The translations under genes and the position numbers were made by a program. Positions 3,320 to 24,790 of a stretch of 64,000 bases of DNA are shown here, piece after piece (the stretch's first letter is position 1; the number at the start of each line of letters is the position of its first letter). Under the pieces are notes generated by a model. That model saw only the letters and a list, made by a program, of their open reading frames with translations, had not been told where the DNA came from and did no database searches. The stretch comes from Ophelia neglecta. Lineage: Eukaryota. The DNA is taken from contig OZ260666.1 in assembly GCA_965285935.1 (NCBI GenBank), positions 37,076,001 to 37,140,000 on the forward strand, read 5' to 3'.

Positions 3320-3910
3320 AACGACCTTAATTAATTTTTGTTCAGGTCATTAATAAAGTTAAACTAGTTAACTTATTACACAGTACTAGTTAACTTATTA
3401 CACAGATTGTAGTAGGTTCTATTTGACCTCAATAATAATGCAGGTCATTCTTAAAGTTGGTGTCATATGACCTCAATAATAATGCAAAATGACCCTAACT
3501 AATTCTTTTTCAGGTCATTAATAAAGTGAACTAGTGAACTTATTAGTGGGTTCCATAAACCTCAATAATAATGCAAAATGACCTTAACTAAATTTTTTTC
3601 AGGTCATTAATAAAGTTAACTAATTAACTTATTACACACATGGTAGTAGGTTCCATATGACCTCAATAATAATGAAAAACTGCCTTAACTAATTTTTTTT
3701 CAGGTCATTAATAAAGTTAACTAGTTAACTTATTACACAGTACTAGTTAACTTGTTACACAGATTGTAGTAGCTTCTATATAACCACAATAATAAGGCAG
3801 GTCATTAGTAAAGTTGTTTCCATGTGACCTCAAGAATAATGCAAAACCACCTTAACTAATTATTTTTCAGGTCATTAATAAAGTTAACTAGTTAACTTAT
3901 TACACAGATT
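3320..3910. repeat. Degenerate ~120-bp tandem repeat inside the HINE
   Basis: Recurring ttcaggtcattaataaagttaactagttaacttattacacag and gacctcaataataatgca. Confidence 0.85.
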
Positions 3911-5454: not shown

Positions 5455-5655
5455 GCAATGGAGGAGTCAATAGAGAGAGAGCGTATTGGCAAGCCGCTCA
5501 AGGAGATGGAGTTAGAGCCAGCGGCGCCCATGTTTGACCTGATGCCAGAGGCTATGCAGGTCGAGGAGGGTGACTCAGCCAAATTCATGGTGAAAATCTC
5601 TGGCCACCCTCGACCCCGCCTCACATGGTGGATCAATGGAGCTATCGTGGTAGAT
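5455..5655 (+). CDS. Exon, linker plus N-half Ig
   Basis: APMFDLMPEAMQVEEGDSAKFMVKISGHPRPRLTWWING; acacag / GAT|GTACGT. Confidence 0.9.
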
Positions 5656-5959
5656 GTACGTTCACCTTGATACATATACAGAGAATATTTAATCTTAATA
5701 TTATTTTTATGTTTGGTTTGCATAATCAACCATTTTTATTTATGTCAATTCATATTTAAAAAAAATACGGGATGATTTTTTTGGTTCAATGGGGAAATTT
5801 AGTAGAAAATGTACTATAAATTTTTATTGATGTATTAAATAAAGGTATGAAAAAAATGTTCTTCAAGTCAACTACTTTAAAGCATGCTCCTAAAACTAGC
5901 ATTTTGTGTAGCATATTGAACCATAGCATGAAATTAAGGTATATTATTACTGTTCACAG

Positions 5960-6146
5960 AGTCCAAGATTCCGCCTTCGCTATGACGGAATGATTCACAT
6001 TCTGGAAATCCCCAAAGTGAGAGACTATGACAACGGCACAATCCGTGCTGTAGCCAAGAACCCGCTGGGAGAGGCCGAGTGTTCTACCACTCTGATGGTC
6101 ATCCCACGCTCCGACTGGAGAAGCCTCCTCAAACAAGCTCCCCGAT
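5960..6146 (+). CDS. Exon, C-half Ig (similar to kettin C-terminal Ig)
   Basis: SPRFRLRYDGMIHILEIPKVRDYDNGTIRAVAKNPLGEAECSTTLMVIPRSDWRSLLKQAPR; tcacag / T|GTAAGT. Confidence 0.9.
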
Positions 6147-7295
6147 GTAAGTAGTATTTACCATATAATGGACTAGTCCTCTAAGCTTGAAGGTCTCAGT
6201 AGGTTTTCCATAAGCCAACATCATAAGATTTTATTTTTTAAGTCATATTCAGAACATTCGTTCAGTACCAAGACATTTATCATTTTGAATGTAAACATCT
6301 GTGTAATTAATGGTTAAAAACACACTATAAATACCAACTCACTTGCTAGCTATAGACAGTTCTCCAACACTACCTTATGTAAACACAACCACATGCGCTT
6401 CACTTTTTACTAGCCCGGTGTCCATGAAAACTATTTAAAAAAGTAGTTTACCAGAAATATGGCAATTCTCAAAGATATAGCCACCATGTGGTCAGCAAAT
6501 GACCAGACTTGTGTCCAGAAGGCTAAAGTTGTCCAGAATAGTCTTGAAATCAGAAATAATCTGTGAAAATATAAGTTAATTAGTTCAGGGACTGGCTTTG
6601 TTGTGCTTGGAGCCAGTGATTGTATGTCTAATGCCCCTTAATACCTCTACACCCAGGTATTATCACAAGACTCAGGCCAACAACTGTAGGTGTTTCAGCA
6701 TGCTACTTCATGTAAGCACTCCCAACTACTACATGTTTCAATACTGCTAGATCTCAGCACTCAGATGGTGTCTAGGATATTGCCATAAAACTTTACATAC
6801 AAATATCTCTTTATCATGGAGACTCAATAAACCAGTGATAGTCTATTCAGCTTGTGTTTTATTAGCTGTAAAATTCTCATCTTATTTATCCTAAGAGGTA
6901 GCTCTTCAAAGTAAATATATTTTCCCTCTTTTGTTAATTTGAAAATTAAGTCAAGTTAGTAGAGGGTTTCTAACAGCAGATAAGACCAGAGATAGACCAC
7001 AGATGCCAGTTGCCAGTATTATTACAATCACCTCAGACTAATCAAATCACAGAACCATGTGGAGTGTATCACATCATGCAATGTAGCTACCTGATACACC
7101 TAACATTAGGAGAAGTCTGGCTGGCCTGCTACCGCTTGGCCTGCAATTCCCCATTTCTTCATGAGCCAGTCTGGCAGCAATGTTGTTCCTTAAAATAGCT
7201 GGGGACGATACCAGAAAAACACTAGGGATAGAGATTTCCATGACTCGGACCATGTGAATTTGTGAGAAATAAGTTGTGTTTTCTGCAAATTCTAG

Positions 7296-7412
7296 CCACA
7301 GTCGAGGTAGAGCTTGAGAAGAGGAAGACGCTGGAAGTCAGGAGTAATGAATTGGACAAAGCACTGAAGAAACCAAAAACTACTGTGGTAGAACTGAGAG
7401 CATTCGAGAGAT
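7296..7412 (+). CDS. Exon, charged linker (TVEVELEKRKTLEVRSNELDKALKKPKTTVVELRAFER), phase 1-1
   Basis: ttctag acceptor (alternative in-frame cag at 7301), T|GTAAGT donor. Confidence 0.82.
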
Positions 7413-7788
7413 GTAAGTATAAAAGACCTTCTTAGTACTGAAGTGACTATCTAGTGGCAGTCAGGGAGCTGATTAATATATATTTTAAAGCATTTAGTTG
7501 ATGGTGGGCCTGGTTTATGTCTGCTTCCTTGAAGAACTTCTTAGCAAATTCAGCTGAAATATGAAACAAATAACAATATTTTTACTAAATGTAAAGAATG
7601 TGATACTCAGTAATCCCTGTACAGGATCTGCTCTCAGTCTGTTTTTGTTAATGAAGATATGACTATGTTAAGCTGGAATGTTTATGGTCTGTATGATTCT
7701 GTAGCCAGAGTATTGATGTCTTTGTTATGGCATATGAGCTGTAGAGTTTTGTAGCTTGATTTTAAGACTTGTCATTTGTGTTGCGTAG

Positions 7789-8086
7789 CTACCCAGGACA
7801 GGGTGCAGCACATCAGGGATGAGGAGGTAAAGCAGGCGTACCTCGACATCAACCTCCAGCACTCCAAGATGGCTCAGACAGGAGGAGCCACCATGGGCGA
7901 GCCCAACGTCCACGTGGAGAACATGGCGCACATTGTCCGCGCCAAGCGTATGATTGACCTAAACACAGCCACCCCCATCGACCACCAGAAACAGACTGTG
8001 GAGAAGACACGACCTACCGCACGTGAACCCCCCATGTTCACGGTGCCCATCGAGAACAAAGAGGTCAAAGAAGGACAGGTCATCAA
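7789..8086 (+). CDS. Exon, linker plus start of Ig
   Basis: ...REPPMFTVPIENKEVKEGQVI; gcgtag / AA|GTATGT. Confidence 0.88.
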
Positions 8087-8417
8087 GTATGTTGTCCTTA
8101 TATTAACACTATTTTAATATATCATCATAGAATTAGATGTATCATCATATAATTAGGGTTACTGAATTCTCACAATATCTTTATGAAGTAAAGGGTTTCA
8201 AATTACCCTTATAATTAGTGTTGATATTTCTTGCTTCCAAACATTGCAATTTTTCATATTTTTATGTATTTTGTGCCTCTATTGTATTAAATGTGATTAT
8301 ACTGTCTAAATTAAGATGTAATTTTGACTTGATTGTGACTTTATGATTATATGGAGTATGCTGTAGAGGCCATAGTTGACATCAGTCAGTATTTTATGAG
8401 CCACCCTTGTGTTTAAG

Positions 8418-8635
8418 GTTTGAGGTTCAGTTCCAAGGCTACCCTACACCAGACATACACTGGTACAGAGAGGGTGTGGAGATCCAGCCATCCCGGGACT
8501 TCCAGATCACCAGCCTCTACCAGAAGTCCTTCCTGGTCATACCAGAAGTCTTCCTGGAGGACTCCGGAACCTTCACCTGTCGCGCTGTCAATGATTTCGG
8601 AATGGCCGAGTGCAGAGCTGTGCTCACCGTACATG
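8418..8635 (+). CDS. Exon, Ig body
   Basis: FEVQFQGYPTPDIHWYREG...EDSGTFTCRAVNDFG; tttaag / G|GTAAGG. Confidence 0.92.
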
Positions 8636-8803
8636 GTAAGGACACATTGTCCCCTTCTCTGTACTATGTACAGTGTCTGTGTAAGGCCAAGCATGGCCGA
8701 GTGCAGAGTTGTGCTCACCGTACATGGTAAGGACACATTGTCCCCTTCTCTGTACATGTACTATGTACAGTGTCTGTGTAAGGCCAAGTGTGGCCCAGTG
8801 CAG
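8602..8803. repeat. 91-bp tandem duplication spanning exon end and 5' splice site
   Basis: atggccgagtgcagag.tgtgctcaccgtacatggtaaggacacattg at 8602 and 8693. Confidence 0.92.
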
Positions 8804-8992
8804 GGTAATTTGGAGGGATAAATTTGTATTTTCTATGATTTTAGAGATGTGCAGAAACCATTCTTTTTGGACTTATTAAAATAAACATAGCATGTTTAGT
8901 TTGTCCAACAATGCCCCTACCTTAATTTGTAAGTCTGTCACATTTATGTTGTCCTTTCAACAAAGGCAACACAAAGTAATCCATTACAATAT

Positions 8993-9515
8993 CAGTACTG
9001 TGTACATGTACATGTATTTATAACAATGCTCATACCCTCACACTAGCCAACATGGAGTCACATAGTAACAATTCATTCTGCTGATTAAAGCAGGTACTTG
9101 GTCTAGAAAAATGCTAAATGTATTATTGATATATGTTGAATTTTTTCAAGATAGAAAGGTGTCACAACAAAAAGTCACAACCCACAAGAGACAATTAGTT
9201 TTGTTATATTCTTATATAAATTGTTCCTCATATTTTGCCTTTGCAGAGGACTTGTCAGTACTGTGTACATGTACTTGTATTAATAACAATGCTCATACCA
9301 TCACACTAGCTAACATGGAGTCGCATAGTAACAATTCATGCTGCTGATAAAAACAGTTACTTCATTTAGAAAAAATGCTAAATGTATTATAGATATAAAT
9401 GTTGAATTTATTCAAAATAGAAAGGTGTCACAACAAAAAGTCACAAGCCACAATAGACCATCAGTTTTGATATCCTTATATAATTTGTTCCTCATATCTT
9501 GCTTTTGCAGAGGAC
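8993..9515. repeat. ~264-bp intronic tandem duplication including the 3' splice site
   Basis: Two diverged copies, each ending ttgcag|aggac (AG at 9246 and 9510). Confidence 0.92.
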
Positions 9516-9647
9516 GTAAACAAAGTGAAGGAATTTCCACCAGAATTCCGAGTGCAGATGCGAGATATCACTATCCGCATTGGAGAGCCTGCAACGTTTG
9601 ACTGTCACATCACAGGACATCCTAAGCCAGAGGCGTACTGGGCTAAG
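9511..9647 (+). CDS. Exon, N-half Ig
   Basis: FPPEFRVQMRDITIRIGEPATFDCHITGHPKPEAYWAK; ttttgcag / AAG|GTACTA. Confidence 0.9.
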
Positions 9648-13067: not shown

Positions 13068-14030
13068 GTAGGTGCTGACTACCCCCCCCCCGCCCCCCCG
13101 GGGGAGCATGGATGTTACATCCCAGGCCTCATAGCCAGCCCGGCTGGGGGATCCTGCATGACCAGAAATGTTACCTTTAATATTCATCTTTAGCTTTGAG
13201 CACTCACTTAGAACAAAGTGTGTTCAAATGAAATATCAGTTTATTTTTAATAACTAATCCAAATATAAACACAACAAAGTGTTAGATACATTTATACACT
13301 ATGTGTTTTTTTAGATATATTTTTTCCCTGCTTGAGTGGTTACAGCTGCATTCAGTTACACCCCCCAATCCCTACCCTAATGTCCTTCACACCCCAGTCC
13401 ATAGCCTTCTGTCCTTCTTCGTGTGTGTGTGCTAGTGTGTTAGATGAGTGAGATCTCTTCTTTTCAGCATGTTTGTTGATTAATGATGATTTTATTGCAG
13501 GCATGTTCAGTTTTGTTTTCAGCTCCTTTTGCCAATTTTGATAATCCATTACTGTTTATGATATTTCAGGCAAATGAAATTTTTGTAATCTATTACTAAT
13601 ATAATCTATGAAGTGACTTTTTCATTTATGTTGTGTACTAACCAGTTTATTAAAGCAGCATGTAGATTATTTAGGTTTGAGTGACAGTGTTCCAATCTGG
13701 CATGTCAGACCTGTGTATACTACTACCCCTGGAGCAGTGTGCCGGAGGGTGAGTGAGACATGTTAATGACTTGGGTGCAACATAGACATTTTTAACATTC
13801 TTAACATACTGAAATCTTATTTGATCATATTATAACTCTGTATTCTCTTATGAGATAAATTTCCATAATTGGATGTATCCATTGATTTCATGTAGATGTA
13901 ATAGTAGGTTATGAGGCAGCTACAGAAGCACATATTCACTGATTCATTAAAGGTATTTTATATATATATGGGGGGGGGGGGGGGGTAGTTATATGGTGAG
14001 GTTTCTGACAGTGTTATTGTTTTTCTATAG

Positions 14031-15300: not shown

Positions 15301-15518
15301 GCTGGAGTGCCATGTAGAGGCCTATCCTCCTCCTAAGATATCATGGCATGTTAATGGAGTGGAGATCAAGCCATCCACCAAGTACTTCATTGGTCTGGAG
15401 GGCTCTAAGAGTGTGTGTGAGATCCGTAATGTGACCCCTGCAGATATGGGTGTTTACACGTGTAAGGCCTACTCCGACATAGGCGAGGCTGTAACCAGCA
15501 CCACTCTCTATGTCATAG
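15301..15518 (+). CDS. Exon, Ig body
   Basis: LECHVEAYPPPKISWHVNG...ADMGVYTCKAYSDIG; attgcag / G|GTAAGT. Confidence 0.92.
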
Positions 15519-15664
15519 GTAAGTGAGCTCAGTTAGAGAAAGTTGGTCATTTGCATGATAACTGTGAAACTTTAATGTAAAATCATATTTTGCTCATGAA
15601 GTGACATTTCAATTTGAATCCTAAAAACCAGGATTATTGAATGAATCTGATTTAATTCTTTTAG

Positions 15665-16381
15665 TGCCTGAGGTCCCGTCAGAACCTCCCCAATTTGTGC
15701 AGCAACTGAAGAATGTGACAGCTCAAGATGGCAAAGAGGTTGTGCTCACCTGTGTGGTGAAGGGAACACCCATGCCGGAGGTACAGTGGTACCACAACCA
15801 CAGAAACATTGACAAGAGTGAGGACTTTGTCATCAACTATGACCGCAAGACTGGCAAGATTGACCTGGTCATTGTGGACTGTCTGCCTGATGACCATGGC
15901 AGGTTTAAATGTGTGGCCAGCAACCGTTCAGGGCAGGCTATCACAGAGTGTGTCCTTACCGTCCAGACTAAAACAGAGAAAGTCATCGAGGAGAAACATG
16001 AGGTGAGAAAGGAGTCGGTTGAGTCTGTTCACAGCAAGTCCAGCTCGGACACGGAGACCAAGCTGGTCAAGAAGGTGGTAAAGAGGGTGAGCGGTCAGCC
16101 GCCCCGGTTCACCAAGCCCATCCAGCCCTGTGTGGTCAAGGAGGGAGAGTCCTGCCAGTTCCATGCCATCTGCACTGGAGCACCCACACCTGAAATCAGC
16201 TGGCTGAAAGACAAGGTGGAGTACAAGCCGGAGGGCCGTCACGTTCCCGGCTTCAACCCGGAGACCGGGGAGTGTACACTTCTCATCAACAACGCCCGAC
16301 CTGAAGACGTGGGAGTCTACTCCTGCCGGGCCGGCAACGTCGCCGGACGAGCCACCTGCACAGCTAACGTGGTCGTAGTCC
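15665..16381 (+). CDS. Cassette exon A: Ig - short (~45 aa) spacer - Ig, phase 1-1, 717 nt
   Basis: ORF 15637..16512; ttttag / C|GTAAGT. Confidence 0.93.
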
Positions 16382-17348
16382 GTAAGTACCAGACTGCTTT
16401 GTTGCCTGTCTATGTGACTTATCTATTTCTTATATTTGATTTCCAACAATTCCCACTATTTATAAATCAAATACAAATGAATGGTATGAAAACCTTTCTC
16501 TTGAATCAATAATTCAAAACATGTTTATCAATTTGTCTTTTTATACCCTTTTCTGCATGTCTGCTGCAACCTCCCTTGTCTTTCACCCTCTACTTTTTGC
16601 ACCTTGTGTTAATGTGTTGTCTCTTTATGTTTGTGTTTGTATGTGTTGTGTTTTATTCTCAGGTATGGCATAGATATATACCAGTTTATGGCTTTTTGTA
16701 TACACTATTGTAGGGAAGTTTATTTCTTAATTTGAACTCGAAAGCTTTGTTGATATAGTTTCAGAAGTGCAGATTATTTTCATCATGATTTATAAATAAT
16801 TTATCAGTATTCTTGCACTAAATATTGTTGCTGGTAGAAAGTGTGCCTTTTTAAAATAAATAACTCCTAGATGAAGTAGTATTATCAGTATAGTGTAGTA
16901 TGCAGAATGGTCAGACAGTAGTTAATGGTATGGAATAGAACCTAGTCATATCTATATCTGCAGGGTACAGCTAGTGGCTTATTGTACATGTACAATGGTA
17001 CAATGATATATGTGTTATTTTCATTGTAGCTACACATTATATCATATTACATTATTGTAATAACTCGACACAGCCTCATAGGATAGGGTTTAACCTGTGA
17101 AGTAAGGGATGAGGCATTTACATAGTGACTCTGAACTGGAATGCTGTACCAATACTGCATTGTAGTTGTTTGTTTTATTGGATAGACTCATGTTGTATAG
17201 CAGCTACAGTGAGCCTTTGATGCAAGATAATCACACCATTCTTGAAGATGAGATTAGGTTTTCTAGGACTGCTTGGCTGTACATTGGGCTTGCCCTAGTG
17301 CCTGTTCACAAAAGAGACAATTGATGTCTTTTATAATTTTGACTACAG

Positions 17349-19946
17349 AGGCAGACCAGTGCATGGGCGGTTTGGACATGGCAGCTGACTACAATGCCCC
17401 TGTCTTTAGCCTTCCTCTCACACCTAGTCATGTGTTTGATGGAGATGAAGCTTTATTGAGATGCAAACTAACAGGTTTTCCACACCCTGATGTTTTGTGG
17501 TACCACAATGACATAATTGTAGGTGACAGAGATGGGTTTGTTATCAAACATGACAGAGAAACGGGCATTTGTGAACTGATCATACTAGAAGTTTTTCCAG
17601 AAGATCAAGGATATTTTAAATGTGTTGCTTCCAATCCTGCTGGAACAGCCATATCAAGTGCTAAGTTAGTTGTTTGTGGATTTGCAAGCACAAGTGAATT
17701 TGAGTCCTCTGAAACCTCCGAGCTGGAGATGCAAATACAGCCACCAAGGCAGCCACCTCCCTCTCCATCGGAGGAGTACATTGTACCATCTGTCAGGGAA
17801 AATAAATTCCATGATTCTTTGATAGAAAGGACTGATGAAACTTGTGTGGTTGTAGAGGACAACTTCAAAATGGACCAAACATATTACAGTGTCAAGGAAG
17901 CTTGTATGGAAGATGAGAATAGCCAAGAAGACCTGACTAGACAACAGTATCTTATTCAACTACCGTTAGTGAAAGAGGTGGAAGTGACTGAGCTAACAAC
18001 TACCACTGAGGAAACATTCCAAACAACGAGGACAATAAGAGAAACAATGGAAGTGATTAAAGAAAGCCACCCTCAAATGGGTAGGAAACAAATAATAGAT
18101 CAGGCTGCTTCTGTATGTAACAAAGAAACTCAAACAGAGGCTACTAGTGATGTACAAATTGAGAATAAGGTTGTTGAAGAAGAAACAATACGGACTCTTG
18201 TAGAAGAGGAAGTCACTCTCCCCTTTAATATGACTGGCCTATGCTTGACAGAGCCAGCAAGTGCTCAGCCGGCTGATGATGTGATGCCATTCGCTCTGAG
18301 AGAGAAGTTGTTTTTGCCTCCAGTTGAAGAGACCTCACATTCTGACGATGAGAGAGCAAGAGACAATGTGTACCCAGTGCTCACCGACTTCGACATGAAA
18401 GAGGTGGCAGTGCCCAAAGAGATTCCCACCGTCATTGCTCTTGGTGAAGAAAACATGGTTGGATCTATTATGCCTGCATGTACCATGGAGATGCCAGTAG
18501 TAAAGACCTCACAGTATACAACTGTAGTTAAACAAAACAGTATGAATCAACATTCACAGCAACGTGCCATTATTGTGCAGGCAAATCCACAGCTTGTTTT
18601 TCAGGCAGAGGAGAATGTCCAGGAAATTGTTGCTGAGACTGATGCCGAAAATACACTTGATGGCACCGAAATTCAAGAACTGAATGAGGCAAATGCTGTT
18701 ACATTTCTTGTCCAGATGCATACCTCTGAATTGAAATTAGATATACCTGCAGAACAAGTGCAGCAACTGCCTTCAGAGGTCCCAATAAATGTGCCTCTGT
18801 ATATAGAGAGTGTCATATTTGCGATAGAAGAGCATCCCTATTTGACTACTTTGGGTGTGTGTGAGCCTTTTATTGAAATGAACAAAGGGAAGCGCAATGT
18901 ACCTGAGGCCTGTATTTCACATACTATTGAAAAAGTGCAGCTTGTAGAAGACAGTGATATGCTGGACTATAGAGCAAGAGTTAAGATAACCCCTGTCACA
19001 GTGTCTTCAGTCCATCAAGTAGTAGGCAAACCAACAGTTACTGTCATTGGTACTTCAGAACACATACCAGTAAAGACAAGTATGTGTCCTCTTCAACAGC
19101 TACATACTAAAACTACTACAACATTCTCTGAGAAAACAGACGAAGATGCTAAAACAAAAGGCTGCAGTGAAACCAGTCCTGAAACTGTAAATGAAGAAAG
19201 TCCCCTTTCCAGACCTTTAGAAGCAGATATGACAGTAGAAGACCATCCAACTGTGGAGCATATTAAACCCACAGTAAGGGACCAGATTGAGCACCAAAGG
19301 GAAACTGAGGTAGTTCATATAAAGCCTGATGAAATCTACCAGCCACCTGAGATTAAGCTACATATATCTCCAAATCACCCAGAACCATTTGTCTTAGCTG
19401 TTTGTGAACCAAAGGTCATCAATCATAAGTTATTATTGATAGCTGATGAGGTGAACCTGGGGGATAAAATAGAGGATTCTACTATTGTGATGTTTCCTGA
19501 GCATCCACTAGAACCAAACAGGCTCTCTAGCGTCAGTGTACCTACTGAACCAAACACAGAACAGTTCATTACCTCTGCTGTAGAACATGCAGAAGACAAT
19601 GACAGGAACATTCCAGCTCCTTGTGGAGGGATTGTCTTGGTTGAGACACACGAGGCATTGCTTCCCGCCCGGTTTGAACATCCTATCCAGCCTCTTTTAG
19701 TGTCCGGAGGGGACTCGAGTACTTTCAGTGCTAAGGTGTCTGGCTTCCCCCTGCCCGAAATTAGTTGGTACAGAGATGGAATCCTTCTGACAAATTCAGA
19801 CAGGATCTGGGTACAATTAAATACAGAAAATAATCAGGTTGTCCTCACAATTTTGGATTCTAAGCAAGAGGACTCTGGAAATTACGTGTGTCATGCTTCT
19901 AATGAGGCAGGCACATCTGTGTGCTCTGCCAATCTGGTAGTTGTAA
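17349..19946 (+). CDS. Cassette exon B: Ig - ~660 aa unique E/V/T/P-rich spacer - Ig, phase 1-1, 2598 nt
   Basis: ORF 17273..19975; ctacag / A|GTAAGT. Confidence 0.88.
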
Positions 19947-20732
19947 GTAAGTACACAAGCAAATATTTCAGATAGAATATCATAGGTTATTAGGTGTAAT
20001 GCAAAAAGTTCAATGCCCACCTTCGTATACAATTGGTAATTATTTTTTCATAATCTTACTAGAAAATGTACCAGTAATACAGACGTTAATGGATTTGTCA
20101 TATACTGCTACTGTGCTGTCAACTGTCACTGTACATGTCAGTGTGTCTTGATGTGGTATGTTTGGTATTCTTGTCTGTTGTTTATTTTATTAATTGTTGT
20201 TGTTACTAATATTTTATGACTTGCATTCATGTGTACATGTATATGTTATATGCAATGAATTTGGAGTGACTGCTTTGAATTCATACTACATGTATAATCA
20301 AGCTTTTGTGGGCTTTAGCTGATTCCTTGTCAATAACTTGTCATAGCCACTTGTTACTATACAAACTAGGAAGTATTCCTAGTTAAATGTGTTCTGCAAA
20401 CCAGAAATCACACTTGTGATTAATGATTGCAGTTGGATAAAAGCTAGTGTCCTTTTTTGTGATATTCCACTTGGAATATTGTTCCCACTGTACAGAAGCT
20501 TCAGAACATAGACTGTTGCTGAAGGTTGCCTATTACTGCTGGTTAATTGATGTTGTTAACTAGTTGACTGGATAGATATTCCTACTAGGAATATATGTCA
20601 TAGACAGCAGAAGTAAGATGTCAGTGCTTTTGGCTGTCCATCCCTGTAGTAGAGCATGGACATGGTGACAGTACTGGTATGTGTTCACATGCTGGTGGTA
20701 ACCACATTTTTGTCTATCCCTTGTTTATCTAG

Positions 20733-23700
20733 CCCCTGAAGTACCTGAACCACCTTACTTCATCACTGGGCTCCAGCCAATAACAGCCAAGGATGGTGAT
20801 CAGGTGACACTGAGCTGTCAGGTCATTGGTAGGCCAAAGCCATCGGAGATCACATGGTATCATGGCACTAAGTTATTGGATGATAAGTGTGATTTTATCA
20901 CACATTATGACTCAGAGACTGGTGTTTGCCAACTTATCATTGTTGAGTGCATTACAGAGGACACTGGACTTTTTACATGCAGTGCAAAAAGTACTGCTGG
21001 AGAGGCAGTCACATCTGCTAGACTTGTTGTTCAAGAGGAAAATAGAGGGGAAGAAGATGCCATGGAGAGTGAAGTCACATCAGAAACAAGCACAAAGTAT
21101 ATAGAAACTGTTTCTGTGTATTCAACAAAGAAGGAGCTAGATCGCAAAGAAATACAGGACACAATCCCAAAGCACCATCAGATCATTCAGACAATTGCGT
21201 TAGAACCCCAAACCCCTGAGGTAGAAGTGAGTCCTCCAGACGACCAACAGGTCTGTGTTGATCACAGATACAGAACCACATACAAGGAACATCTAATGGG
21301 AGATGGGGAACTTCCAGGCATTGCTTTTACTGTATCTCTGCCAAAACAGCGTTTGAGAGTGAAACAGAGAGCACAAGAGGCATTGCATTCAGAAACTGAG
21401 ACAGAAACTGACATTGACATTGATGAAATAGAAGATCATGGAACAGCAAATCCTCACTACCAAGAATTCATTATGAGATCACATGAGCCCAAGTCTTGGG
21501 CATTCAAAGCAGAACTACCAAAAGAAAAAGAAGTCACTACCATCATGTACAAGGCCTGCATTTCTGCTGATGTTAAGCCAAGAACATTTTCCATACAAGC
21601 CCCTGATGTCCAAGAACTTAAACTGACAGAGCCAGAGAAACTGGCCGCAACTACAGTTGTTCAAAAACCTAAACAAGTTCTGCTTAAAGAACCTATGCTA
21701 ATAGTCAAAGGAGAAACTAAGGAACCTGAGAGTGTTGTTTTGACAGGAGTTGAAGTTGTCACTGTTAAGTCAGTTATTCCAGAAGCTGAAAAGATAGAGC
21801 TTTACAAAACTGAGCAAAGAGTCTCAGCTTCATCAAAATCTCCCCCAAGAGAAGAAATAAATTTCCAGGAATATTCCCCCAGTGAAATTCCAATCACTGT
21901 AACTGAATCTGAATCAGAAGCTGAGATTTTGGATGGATTGACAAGGAGACACTATTATAGGTCACCAGATAAGTTCACCACCACTTATTATGAGGATATA
22001 GTGTCTGAATCAGAGTTACCAGAAGTGGCTATTACTATACCGATTCCTGATGGATCAGTATCAGATTCTGAACTCTATCCTACAAGAAGACTTTATGTTG
22101 GCAAACATCATATGCAAAGACCCAGAAGTCAGGAAGATTTAGTGACAGAAACTGAAACTGAATCTGAAGTAGAAATATCTGATGAGGTCCTTGCTAAGAA
22201 AGAACACAGACGACATGGGCCTGCGTACCAGGAGAGAATCAGGAGGGAAACTAAACTAAAACCTGTTAATGTGGAAATTGAATACCAGCTGTCAGATGAT
22301 TCTGATGTCGAAAAAGAACCTGAAACAATCTCACATTCTATCAAAATACATAAAACAGTTCAGCCAAAAACAGAAAGTGTCTGTAAAACAGTGATTGTAA
22401 AACATCACAAGCCGCTGGTTAACTTGTATAGAATGACACCATTGGCTAGAACTGATGATGGCCACACACTGCAGCAGAGTGACAGTGGAACTCTACCAAC
22501 CAGAAGTCTCCACCCTGTGACAACAACAGCTGAGGAAATGAAGAGAGAGGATTATACAAAACCAGACAGATCCCGAAGACAGAGGGTGATAATCCAACCA
22601 CCCGAGGAGGATGCTGAATATGAGTCTATCATTTCTGAAACTGTAACAAAGAGCAGCCAACACATGAGTTCCGAGTACACCTCCCAATCTTCTTATAAAG
22701 AAACATTTGAGAAAAGCACAACATATGGCTCTGAAACCCTAGATGTCGGTTCTGATTCAGAGCGCATTCTTACGGACAGAACTCCAACTGTGCCAAAAGA
22801 ACCCAAACCAAAATCAAGACGCTCATATCAAACAGCTATCCAGCCTGAAATTATGCTACATATTCCTGTTGAACATCAGACTAGCATAGCAGGCCGCAGA
22901 GGCCACAGAGGCAGGGGCGAAATTGACAGGAAGGGCTGTCCTAAGACTCCAGAAACATTCAAAGACAGAATGCATTCTAGGGAAGTCATTTCTTCTACCT
23001 TATCAGACTCTGAATATATGCACTTTAAAGAGGAGTATCGCCGGAAAACAGAATTAACTAGATGGTCAGATGATGAAGAGGCAAGGAGAAATGTGCCTGT
23101 TAAACACATTACTTCTACTAAAAGAATAAGACCACACAGCAGTGGGCCCATAGACTCAGTACCAATAAGTGTTACATCAACCCAAAGGACCCAAGCTCCA
23201 GCTGGAACGGGAATGCCACGGTTCACTGTTGAAGTAGCATCAGAGCCATGCAAGGTAGTAACTTGTGTTGAGTCCAAAGAAACCACTTCTGAGAAGAAAG
23301 ATTCAAAGAAGACAACTGAGACAGTAACAACTAGATTGAAAAAGGGGAGAAGTAGAGACACTTCTGTTTTTATTCCTCATAGCGAGGACCGAATGAAACA
23401 TGACAATACTCTGAGCCCTTCTAGTCTGATGCCGCCATCTGATTTACCTGACACTCCTCCATACACACGCAAACACAGAGTAATGGAAATCCCACTGGCA
23501 TTAAGCACACCACTAAGTGATACTGAAAATCAAACTTCAACCCGAACAGATGAGTCCTTATCAAGGATGGACCAAACAACGGAGGTAAAAGATACACCAA
23601 AAGATGTGACTCTTGATGAATCTCAGATGGATGTGGAGAAATCATTGACTGGGGCTGAGTCTAAAGGTCAACAAACACCAGTAGTGCTAACAAAGGAAGG

Positions 23701-24140
23701 CCAGGAGGTGATTAACAGGCATATATTAGAACATGGTGGCTACGCCTCCCAAAATGGAGCAACAATCCTCTGTGACGAGAGCATGCAGATGATGCCGCCT
23801 CATTTTATTGTCCCCATTGAACCACAGATTGTACATGAAGGTCAAACATGTACCTTCACTGGCAGGGTGACAGGTGTACCCATGCCAGAGATACGGTGGT
23901 ATAAGGAACTATCAAGAGCCACTCCCATTAAAAGGGCTAGAACATCCATGGATCAGGATGTGAAAACTCTGGCTTTGGAACTTGCAAAAAGTGCCAGGCT
24001 GACCCAGTCATACAACCGAGAGACTGGCGACATTTCTTTGGTGCTCAGAGACTGCACGGTGGAAGATGGTGGCAATATTTCTTGTGTGGCCACTAACTGT
24101 GTTGGTCGGGCTACTTGTACGGCTAACATGATCGTCGTGC
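20733..24140 (+). CDS. Cassette exon C: Ig - ~900 aa unique S/T/E-rich spacer - Ig, phase 1-1, 3408 nt
   Basis: ORF 20804..24148 extended upstream to PEVPEPPYF; tatctag / C|GTAAGT. Confidence 0.9.
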
Positions 24141-24477
24141 GTAAGTAAATCAATACTTTAAGTTTCACATAGCCCACAAAAGCAATTATCTGCAAAAGGT
24201 CATTTGTTTGACTACTGAGTGTTCTGCTGTTACATTCTGACTAATTTCCTGGTGTGATGAGTAATCTTGTTTACAGCTCTGCATACATTCTTTATTTGTT
24301 GACCTTCCCCCTGTCCCTCAAGTCTGAAATGCAACTTCTTTCCTTGCACATCTTACCAGTAAACCTTTGCTTCCTTATTGTATCTCTACCTTTTCATTCA
24401 TCTGTTCACACAAACAATGGGCTCGCCGACCCCTGTAGGAAATGCTTCTTAACGCTAAATTACTTGATTATTTTCAG

Positions 24478-24637
24478 CTCCCGATGCTGAGGTGACAATC
24501 ACAGAAAAGACTGTCTCAGTGAAGAAGGAGAAGGTGACTGTGATTGGAGAACAAGAGACTCGTGTGGTGGAGAGCTCACCCACGTTTGGCCAAACCTTGC
24601 TGCCTGTAACAGAAGTCCATATTGGAGAAAATGTCAA
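24478..24637 (+). CDS. Exon, linker plus start of Ig
   Basis: PDAEVTITEKTVSVKKEKV...SSPTFGQTLLPVTEVHIGENV; ttttcag / AA|GTGAGT. Confidence 0.87.
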
Positions 24638-24790
24638 GTGAGTCAATTTAAACCATACCAGTTGGCTGGAAACAATAGTTTTAATTGTTTAAATCTTAGG
24701 TTAATAAAACCCAGCCCTTTGTGTTTCTTTTGAGATATAAGTCAATGTTTTTTTATTACTTGACTAATGTTGAGTTCCTGTTTATTTCAG

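What the first reader, a model, noticed from the sequence alone, without database searches (positions are those of the whole stretch)
16395..24196. Candidate docking-site/selector RNA pairings around the three cassette exons
Seen: GCTTTTGTGGGCT (20302-20314, intron after exon B) is the exact reverse complement of AGCCCACAAAAGC (24171-24183, 30 nt after the exon C donor). The pairing extends by ATAAT/ATTAT across a small bulge. A rough equal-base estimate for a chance 13-mer between these two introns is about 0.004, uncorrected for my search. The same downstream patch has weaker overlapping partners: TGCTTTGT...CTATGTGACTTA just after exon A (16395-16421; CTATGTGA pairs with 24165-24172) and TGTGAAACTT before exon A (15563-15572, pairs with 24160-24169). 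Established: competing pairings with a downstream docking site drive mutually exclusive splicing in insect 14-3-3zeta and Mhc. Inference: pairing of the B selector loops out C, pairing of the A selector loops out B and C, and no pairing allows C.
Basis: partly seen in the sequence, partly recalled or inferred. Interest (0 to 1): 0.8.

Follow-up and report, generated by a model that had tools for sequence, protein, structure and literature searches.

The report
Conserved RNA bridge around titin exon
Two short intron segments on either side of a 3.4-kb exon of an invertebrate titin-like muscle gene can base-pair, and both are kept letter for letter in a distant relative whose introns are otherwise unrecognisable. 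They are therefore very probably a real RNA bridge that helps decide whether that exon is used, but the proposed three-way switch is not supported.

Summary
The 13-nt inverted match (20302-20314 / 24171-24183) is real. In this genome alone it is only mildly unusual. P is 0.007 for that intron pair, 0.016 against the three upstream introns and 0.057 over all six pairs. The whole-intron duplex energy is z = -1, and a longer perfect 15-mer nearby is plainly chance.

Comparison with a relative settles it. In the colinear orthologous locus L005, four-fold codon sites are only 38% identical and the introns cannot be aligned. Yet the selector core sits in the same B-C intron and the dock core in the same C-D intron, both exact. 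They form a 16-bp perfect helix plus one G.U pair (-32.6 kcal/mol, z = -4.3). The flanks differ between species but stay complementary within each. It is the only conserved inter-intron complementary pair among five introns.

The weaker "A selectors" are at chance level and are not conserved. My best reading is a single bridge that loops out exon C and favours its skipping (B joined to D). This is a new member of the known class of long-range RNA structures that control splicing.

No RNA data could be obtained, so whether the exons are alternative or mutually exclusive remains untested. The scan's own follow-up on this stretch was withheld. I saw no note of this pairing on other DNA.

The parts
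15665..16381 (+). Exon A (717 nt, Ig-linker-Ig, phase 1-1)
   Evidence: Splice sites read. Orthologues reach 91% aa identity.
17349..19946 (+). Exon B (2598 nt, Ig-long spacer-Ig, phase 1-1). It ends at the second of two tandem GTAAGT donors (19943 and 19947), and only the second keeps the frame.
   Evidence: The orthologous exon is in L005, L003, L002 and L105.
19947..20732 (+). B-C intron (786 nt), which carries the selector
20294..20314 (+). Selector arm: the 13-nt core 20302-20314 plus the ATAAT extension 20294-20298. It lies 356 nt into the intron, 418 nt before the exon C acceptor.
   Evidence: The core is exact in L005 at 9554-9566, in the same intron.
20733..24140 (+). Exon C (3408 nt, Ig-long spacer-Ig, phase 1-1), the exon enclosed by the pairing
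   Evidence: The orthologue P0058/L005 is 45-50% identical over the whole length.
24141..24477 (+). C-D intron (337 nt), which carries the dock
24171..24189 (+). Dock arm: the 13-nt core 24171-24183 plus the ATTAT extension 24185-24189. It starts at intron base 31 after the exon C donor.
   Evidence: The 14-mer 24172-24185 is exact in L005 at 13731-13744, in the same intron.
24478..24638 (+). Exon D, a short and strongly conserved exon that follows the cluster (75-85% aa identity across many species)

Best explanation
In the pre-mRNA, the selector (20294-20314) in the intron between exons B and C base-pairs with the dock (24171-24189), which lies 30 nt downstream of the exon C donor. The duplex closes a loop of about 3.9 kb that holds the last 418 nt of the B-C intron, all of exon C and its donor. 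It brings the exon B donor region close to the exon D acceptor.

The most likely consequence is that exon C is skipped and B is joined to D, giving a titin-like protein that lacks the roughly 1,136-residue Ig-spacer-Ig module. If the B-C intron is removed before the dock is transcribed, or if the duplex is prevented, exon C is included.

Shown: both arms exist, they are complementary, they are conserved in position and sequence, and their flanks co-vary. Inferred: the duplex forms in vivo, it acts on splicing, and it acts in the direction of skipping.
For: (1) The exact 13-bp complement is at the stated places. The 40-nt segments co-fold at -25.6 kcal/mol, with weak local self-structure of -4.9 and -2.1.

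(2) L005 is a colinear orthologue (up-A-B-C-D). Four-fold sites are 38% identical. blastn and MAFFT cannot align the introns.

(3) The selector 13-mer is exact in the L005 B-C intron, and the dock 14-mer is the only shared word of 10 nt or more in the C-D introns.

(4) In L005 the helix is 16 perfect bp plus a G.U pair, -32.6 kcal/mol. It is the best partner within 10 kb by 11 kcal/mol. It scores z = -4.27, with 0 of 40 shuffles reaching it, in a whole-intron search.

(5) The flanks co-vary. L005 extends the helix by GCTT/AAGC on one side. The window extends it by U-A on the other side and by ATAAT/ATTAT across a loop. The A opposite the selector U in the window is G (wobble) in L005.

(6) An IRBIS-style search over five introns of both species finds this as the only inter-intron conserved complementary pair. 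The null expectation is 0.7 hits at k=8, and the observed pair runs to 12 nt.

(7) The 13-mer is not a repeat. It occurs 15 times in 762 Mb against about 23 expected.

(8) There is no Rfam family here.

(9) All exons are phase 1-1, so skipping keeps the frame. In two other species exon A is followed directly by exon D, so a protein without B and C is viable.

(10) Looped-out exons have lower inclusion, and stems of 9 nt or more change splicing in minigenes (PMC8052449, PMC2724269).
Against: No RNA evidence of any kind is available. Exon C could be constitutive.

Only two species carry the pair. Six more distant loci (L002, L003/L004, L009, L105, L106, L107) lack it or lack the exons.

In the window itself the duplex energy is not better than shuffled sequence once the whole introns are searched.

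With two species, the covariation rests on a few flank positions.

The selector lies 356-461 nt from the exon B donor, so any bridging of B to D is loose.

The direction of the effect (skipping, inclusion or circularisation) is inferred from other systems.
Confidence: 0.55

Rival explanations
1. The full docking-site/selector system. One dock after exon C is contested by a selector after exon B and by one or two selectors around exon A, so that exactly one of A, B and C is chosen.
For: The B selector-dock pair is real and conserved. The layout with a downstream dock matches 14-3-3xi (PMC4691838). A, B and C are ancient paralogues with the same Ig-spacer-Ig plan and the same phase.
Against: The A-B and up-A partners have z = +0.1 and -0.4. 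CTATGTGA and TGTGAAACTT are changed in the close relative L001. The dock portion they need (24160-24172) is not conserved in L005. None of the eight best partners of the L005 dock lies in its A-B intron; the one in the up-A intron, at -19.8 kcal/mol, is at background level. No conserved complementary 8-mer links those introns to the C-D intron.
Confidence: 0.08
2. The flanking inverted repeat promotes back-splicing of exon C into a 3.4-kb single-exon circular RNA. Skipping in the linear mRNA would be a by-product or would not occur.
For: The arms flank one exon, and the dock is only 30 nt from its donor. Conserved complementary regions surround circRNAs in human (PMC8052449), and vertebrate titin yields many circRNAs (PMC5959250).
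Against: From my own knowledge, not tested here: repeats that drive circularisation are usually 30-40 nt or longer, whereas this helix is 13-17 bp. The selector is 418-480 nt from the acceptor. No RNA data are available.
Confidence: 0.12
3. The duplex promotes inclusion of exon C, not skipping. It would draw the two ends of a 3.4-kb exon together, or present or hide a nearby regulatory site (an RNA bridge).
For: The conservation evidence is the same. Other conserved islands lie nearby and could be factor sites: the 18-nt inverted repeat at 20462-20479, AGCATGGACA at 20653-20662 and TGGTGTGATGAGTAAT at 24250-24265. RNA bridges that bring factor sites to exons are known (PMC8052449).
Against: Across known cases, exons enclosed by a stem are on average less included (PMC8052449). 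No factor site has been identified here.
Confidence: 0.12
4. The two islands are not an RNA helix. They are two copies, in opposite orientation, of a double-stranded DNA site for a protein (an enhancer or insulator type element), or two unrelated RNA protein-binding sites.
For: A 12-bp core identical in four instances would also fit a sequence-specific DNA-binding protein. Part of the conserved dock (the AA at 24184-24185) is unpaired in the window.
Against: In each species the flanks outside the core agree between the two arms but differ between species, and one position is kept as a G.U pair, which only makes sense in RNA. The motif is not enriched in the genome. Two unrelated RNA sites being exact complements over 12 nt is very unlikely.
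Confidence: 0.1
5. A chance match with no function.
For: Within the window the match is only P = 0.016-0.057 after correcting for the search. The whole-intron energy is z = -1. A longer 15-mer nearby is chance.
Against: By simple word-frequency arithmetic, the chance that both specific 12-mers recur in the two orthologous introns of L005 is of the order of 1e-9 (953/4^12 x 245/4^12), at saturated neutral divergence.
Confidence: 0.02

Closest known systems
[quoted passage not shown] 2011, as summarised in PMC4691838)
   Same: The dock lies in the intron that follows the last variable exon and precedes a conserved exon. The selector lies in the intron downstream of an upstream variable exon. Pairing would loop out the exon in between. 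The arms are conserved islands in otherwise diverged introns.
   Different: Only one selector was found, not one per variable exon, so no competition is shown. Mutual exclusivity is untested. The exons are 0.7-3.4 kb Ig-spacer-Ig modules rather than short isofunctional exons. The organism is a lophotrochozoan, not an arthropod.
Conserved long-range complementary regions that loop out exons or introns (Drosophila boxes, PMC2724269; IRBIS, PMC4174434; human PCCRs, PMC8052449)
   Same: It is defined in the same way: two intronic words of 9 nt or more, complementary, conserved in orthologous introns that need not align, surrounding a splicing unit. The length (13-17 bp) and span (3.9-4.2 kb) are within the described range.
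   Different: No splicing read-out is available here. The gene (titin-like) and the animal group are new for this class, as far as the papers I searched show.
Competing intronic pairings that control the two mutually exclusive exons of mammalian ATE1 (PMC7797038)
   Same: Short conserved intronic elements whose pairing decides which of two neighbouring paralogous exons is used.
   Different: ATE1 has two elements that compete for a third, plus an ultra-long-range helix. Here a single pair is seen and no competitor was found.
Inverted repeats flanking circularised exons
   Same: Complementary arms lie in the two introns that flank a single exon.
   Different: The arms here are much shorter than typical circRNA-promoting repeats (my own knowledge). 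They are unique sequence, not transposon-derived.

Membership tests
Docking-site/selector competing RNA pairing (Dscam exon 6, 14-3-3xi type) | A cluster of exons of which exactly one is included (mutually exclusive splicing) | not testable with these tools
All database proteins that cover exon A read on into the intron, so they are genomic ORFs and not transcripts.
Docking-site/selector competing RNA pairing (Dscam exon 6, 14-3-3xi type) | One docking site in the intron next to the flanking constant exon | tested here: met
   The dock at 24171-24189 lies in the intron before exon D, which is 75-85% identical in protein across many species. The dock is conserved in L005.
Docking-site/selector competing RNA pairing (Dscam exon 6, 14-3-3xi type) | A selector for each variable exon, all complementary to overlapping parts of the dock so that they compete | tested here: not met
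   Only the B-C intron selector is supported. The candidates around exon A are at chance energy, are changed in L001, and have no conserved complementary word and no counterpart in L005.
Docking-site/selector competing RNA pairing (Dscam exon 6, 14-3-3xi type) | Evolutionary conservation of the arms, with pairing kept through changes | tested here: met
   Met for the single pair. The cores are exact in two species at saturated neutral divergence, and the flanks co-vary. Only two species are available.
Docking-site/selector competing RNA pairing (Dscam exon 6, 14-3-3xi type) | Disruptive and compensatory mutations change and then restore exon choice | not testable with these tools
   This needs a minigene or an edited animal.
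Conserved long-range complementary regions that modulate splicing (Raker 2009 boxes, IRBIS, PCCR) | Two intronic segments of at least about 9-10 nt able to form a stable stem | tested here: met
   13 bp (-25.6 kcal/mol) in the window; 16 bp plus a G.U pair (-32.6 kcal/mol) in L005.
Conserved long-range complementary regions that modulate splicing (Raker 2009 boxes, IRBIS, PCCR) | Both segments conserved together in orthologous introns of other species | tested here: met
   It is the only such inter-intron pair among five introns.
Conserved long-range complementary regions that modulate splicing (Raker 2009 boxes, IRBIS, PCCR) | A measurable effect on splice-site choice | not testable with these tools
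   No RNA data.
circRNA-promoting flanking inverted repeats | Reverse-complementary sequences in the introns on both sides of the circularised exon(s) | tested here: met
   The arms flank exon C.
circRNA-promoting flanking inverted repeats | A back-splice junction detectable in RNA | not testable with these tools
   No RNA data.

The most novel reading that the evidence does not exclude
The pair is the visible part of a true docking-type switch that sets the length of the molecular spring in a lophotrochozoan titin. Pairing would select the B module and exclude the C module. Exon A, or A joined directly to D, would be chosen by partners too weak or too fast-evolving to detect with two species. 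This would be the first docking/selector control of mutually exclusive giant exons outside arthropods and vertebrates, and the first RNA-structure control of titin elasticity.
Probability: 0.1. Interest if true: 0.8.

Novelty: new member of a known kind. Interest (0 to 1): 0.55.

Why it matters
Titin-family proteins set muscle stiffness by including or omitting spring modules. In vertebrates this choice is made by protein factors such as RBM20. Here a short RNA helix that has survived saturating divergence brackets one 1,136-residue Ig-spacer-Ig module of an invertebrate titin-like gene.

If it controls that module, then RNA structure is a means of tuning a giant muscle protein, in an animal group where no such splicing switch has been described. 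It also gives a clean target of two 13-nt arms for disruption-and-rescue experiments.

There is a methodological lesson too. One distant orthologue decided it.

Tried and rejected
I did not try further, so read laying was never used.
All searches were exon by exon, by reference.
- Transcript-derived proteins: every database protein covering exon A runs on into the intron (…VVVVRKY/REY…), so all are genomic ORFs.
- Word search with the last 640 aa of exon C found nothing. The orthologue's ORF (1234 aa) lies above the length limit. It was recovered by the representative search.
- Close relative L001 (91% aa in exon A): only a 2-kb contig could be reached. It covers the up-A and A-B introns but not the B-C or C-D introns.
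- Exon D search and six extra loci (L006-L009, L106, L107). In L006-L008 the contigs end before the exon C donor, so they say nothing. L009 has an 88-nt C-D intron without the motif. L106 and L107 have no B or C exon between A and D.
- L105, L002 and L003/L004 keep the B-C-D plan (L002 and L003/L004 also show exon A) but have no such motif (2 mismatches or fewer) and no outstanding B-C x C-D match. A 13-mer A-B x C-D match in L002 (P = 0.014) was not followed up.
- P0116: no DNA was available.
- Two scans of metagenome contigs. The first found nothing. The second (the 18-mer alone) gave 95 unrelated hits, none with the selector in the right place. Two of these carry 'human gut metagenome' in their names. 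I do not take them for human DNA and did nothing with them beyond that motif count.
- A second candidate pair was rejected. Island 24250-24265 pairs with 17230-17238 in the A-B intron at -23.2 kcal/mol. The partner is changed in L001, several equally good sites exist in L005, and no conserved complementary word was found.
- A second weak site for the dock in the B-C intron (20615-20638, -17.8 kcal/mol) is at background level.
- Local folding around the exon C donor, the dock and the selector shows no structure shared by the two species.
Full report
**The locus.** The window carries a titin/connectin-like gene on the + strand, in a 762-Mb invertebrate genome. Earlier notes of the scan guess annelid or mollusc. 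I could not name the species.

Reading the splice sites directly gives these exons:
- an upstream Ig exon ending at 15518
- exon A, 15665-16381
- exon B, 17349-19946
- exon C, 20733-24140
- exon D, 24478-24638

The introns are up-A 146 nt, A-B 967 nt, B-C 786 nt and C-D 337 nt. All exons begin and end in phase 1, so any of them can be left out without breaking the frame. A, B and C share one plan, Ig-spacer-Ig, with spacers of very different length. All protein searches were made exon by exon, by reference. I built and searched no joined (spliced) sequence.

The chance estimate of 0.004 is correct for that one intron pair. Dinucleotide-preserving shuffles give 0.0067 for the pair, 0.016 when the C-D intron is compared with all three upstream introns, and 0.057 for any of the six intron pairs.

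With a fixed 36-nt dock patch, the B-C partner is exceptional (-25.6 kcal/mol, z = -3.8). The two partners around exon A are at the shuffle mean (z = +0.1 and -0.4). When the whole C-D intron may choose its best site on the whole B-C intron, the observed optimum (-25.3) is ordinary (z = -0.98).

The same 9.7 kb holds 71 inverted pairs, among them a perfect 15-mer between exon B and the region before the exon C acceptor. That 15-mer has no counterpart in the relative. Taken alone, the window does not prove anything.

**Relatives.** Exon A finds a close relative, L001 (91% aa, 64% identity at four-fold sites). Its contig covers only the up-A and A-B introns.

A search of exon C against cluster representatives found P0058 (1234 aa, 50% identity over 970 residues). 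Its contig L005 is colinear with the window from the upstream exon to beyond exon D. Between the window and L005, four-fold degenerate sites are 38% identical, close to saturation. blastn alignments stop at the exon ends. MAFFT alignments of the introns are at noise level.

**The decisive result.** In L005 the selector 13-mer is present, exact, in the B-C intron (9554-9566). The dock 14-mer GCCCACAAAAGCAA is present, exact, in the C-D intron (13731-13744), and it is the only word of 10 nt or more shared by the two C-D introns.

The positions are similar but not identical:
- selector: 356 nt (window) versus 461 nt (L005) into the intron
- dock: intron base 31 (window) versus base 52 (L005)

By simple word-frequency arithmetic, the chance of both specific 12-mers recurring in these two introns is of the order of 1e-9.

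In L005 the helix is longer: 16 perfect pairs plus one G.U pair, -32.6 kcal/mol. This is 11 kcal/mol better than any other partner within 10 kb. It is far beyond shuffles in the whole-intron search (z = -4.27, 0 of 40).

Outside the shared 12-nt core the two species differ, but within each species the arms still match. L005 adds GCTT/AAGC on one side. The window adds a U-A pair on the other side and ATAAT/ATTAT across a 3x1 loop. Where the window has A opposite the selector U, L005 has G. Agreement within a species combined with difference between species is what selection on pairing predicts. It is not what two copies of a protein-binding DNA site would predict.

Three controls support this:
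- An IRBIS-style search for words that are conserved in an intron of both species, and whose complement is conserved in another intron of both species, finds only this pair among five introns (null 0.7 hits at k=8).
- The 13-mer is not repetitive in the genome (15 copies against about 23 expected).
- Nothing in Rfam matches the region.

**What is not supported.**
- Their energies are at chance level.
- In L001, CTATGTGA has become GATTGTGG, and the up-A 10-mer lies in unalignable sequence.
- The part of the dock they would use (24160-24172) is not conserved in L005.
- None of the eight best partners of the L005 dock lies in its A-B intron. One lies in the up-A intron (3655-3673, -19.8 kcal/mol), at background level and 13 kcal/mol weaker than the selector.
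- No conserved complementary word links those introns with the C-D intron.

A second possible pair, 24250-24265 with 17230-17238, was also examined and dropped. What exists is one bridge around exon C, not a three-way competition.

**Phylogenetic range.**
- The up-A-B-C-D plan is old. It is present, with 1:1 orthology of the exons and spacers of quite different length, in L002 and L003/L004. L105, whose contig starts at exon B, shows B-C-D.
- None of these has the motif or an outstanding B-C x C-D match.
- L009 has an 88-nt C-D intron.
- In L106 and L107, exon A is followed directly by exon D with no B or C between. A protein with A joined to D is therefore a natural form somewhere in this group.
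- The bridge is thus specific to the clade that holds the window species and L005.

**Mechanism.** The duplex encloses the 3' part of the B-C intron, exon C and its donor. It leaves the exon B donor and the exon D acceptor outside, brought nearer to each other.

In the systems where this has been tested, such loops lower the use of the enclosed exon (PMC8052449, PMC2724269). The layout is that of a downstream docking site (PMC4691838). I therefore take promotion of exon C skipping (B joined to D) as the most likely effect.

My own inference is that there is a kinetic element. The selector is made about 3.9 kb before the dock, so fast removal of the B-C intron would pre-empt pairing and give inclusion.

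The rivals that keep the helix but change its effect are circularisation of exon C, help for inclusion of a very long exon, and presentation of a factor site. None of these can be excluded without RNA. A DNA-level site is less likely because of the flank covariation and the wobble pair.

**Limits.**
- Only two species carry the pair.
- The close relative's relevant introns could not be reached.

**Verdict.** This is a new member of the known class of conserved long-range RNA pairings that act on splicing.

Noticed in passing
window 20462-20479; L005 9736-9753: An 18-nt island, ATATTCCACTTGGAATAT, is identical in both species in the otherwise unalignable B-C intron, 148-170 nt downstream of the selector. 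It is an 8+8 inverted repeat around CT, so it could be a small hairpin or a palindromic protein site containing an E-box-like CACTTG. It is the longest conserved word in that intron.
   Followed up: partly
window 20653-20662 (and 20636-20675); L005 9969-9978: AGCATGGACA and its neighbours are conserved at the same distance (77-79 nt) upstream of the exon C acceptor in both species. This may be a branch-region or regulatory element of exon C.
   Followed up: no
window 24250-24265; L005 13776-13791: A second semi-conserved island lies in the C-D intron (TGGTGTGATGAGTAAT in the window against TGGTGTGCTGTGTAAT in L005, 14 of 16), about 100 nt after the exon C donor. Its function is unknown. A possible partner in the A-B intron was not confirmed.
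   Followed up: partly
window 17003-17046; L001 1466-1499: A hairpin in the A-B intron has both stem arms (13 and 14 nt) conserved between the window and the close relative, while the loop differs in length (16 versus 6 nt). It folds at about -12.4 kcal/mol in both. It is absent from L005.
   Followed up: partly
The acceptor reading is therefore weakened.
   Followed up: partly
window 19943-19952: Exon B ends in two tandem GTAAGT donors 4 nt apart (GT at 19943 and at 19947). Only the second keeps phase 1, and use of the first would shift the frame. L005 has a single donor there.
   Followed up: no
L106 1-780; L107 1-1810: In two other species (Logan runs SRR27386403 and SRR24442795) the orthologue of exon A is followed directly by exon D, after an intron of about 150-280 nt, with no B or C exon. 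The B and C modules are therefore absent from, or were lost in, some lineages.
   Followed up: partly
L002, L003/L004, L105, L005 against window 15665-24140: The A, B and C modules are 1:1 orthologous across distant species, but their spacers vary several-fold: exon B is about 315-1150 aa and exon C about 340-1230 aa. In L002, exon C appears to lack its first Ig domain. The second Ig of exon C carries an insertion of about 25 residues in the window and in L002.
   Followed up: partly
L005 5630-9146: The exon B orthologue in L005 is called as two ORFs (5630-7348 and 7362-9146). There is therefore a stop or frame change, or a small intron, inside the exon in that assembly.
   Followed up: no
window 19058-19072 / 20672-20686: A perfect 15-nt inverted match links the inside of exon B with the region 46-60 nt upstream of the exon C acceptor.
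   Followed up: yes
L002 9339-9351 / 13437-13449: In the distant orthologue L002 a 13-nt exact inverted match links the A-B intron with the C-D intron (P = 0.014 by shuffles). It is unrelated in sequence to the pair described here and was not examined further.
   Followed up: no
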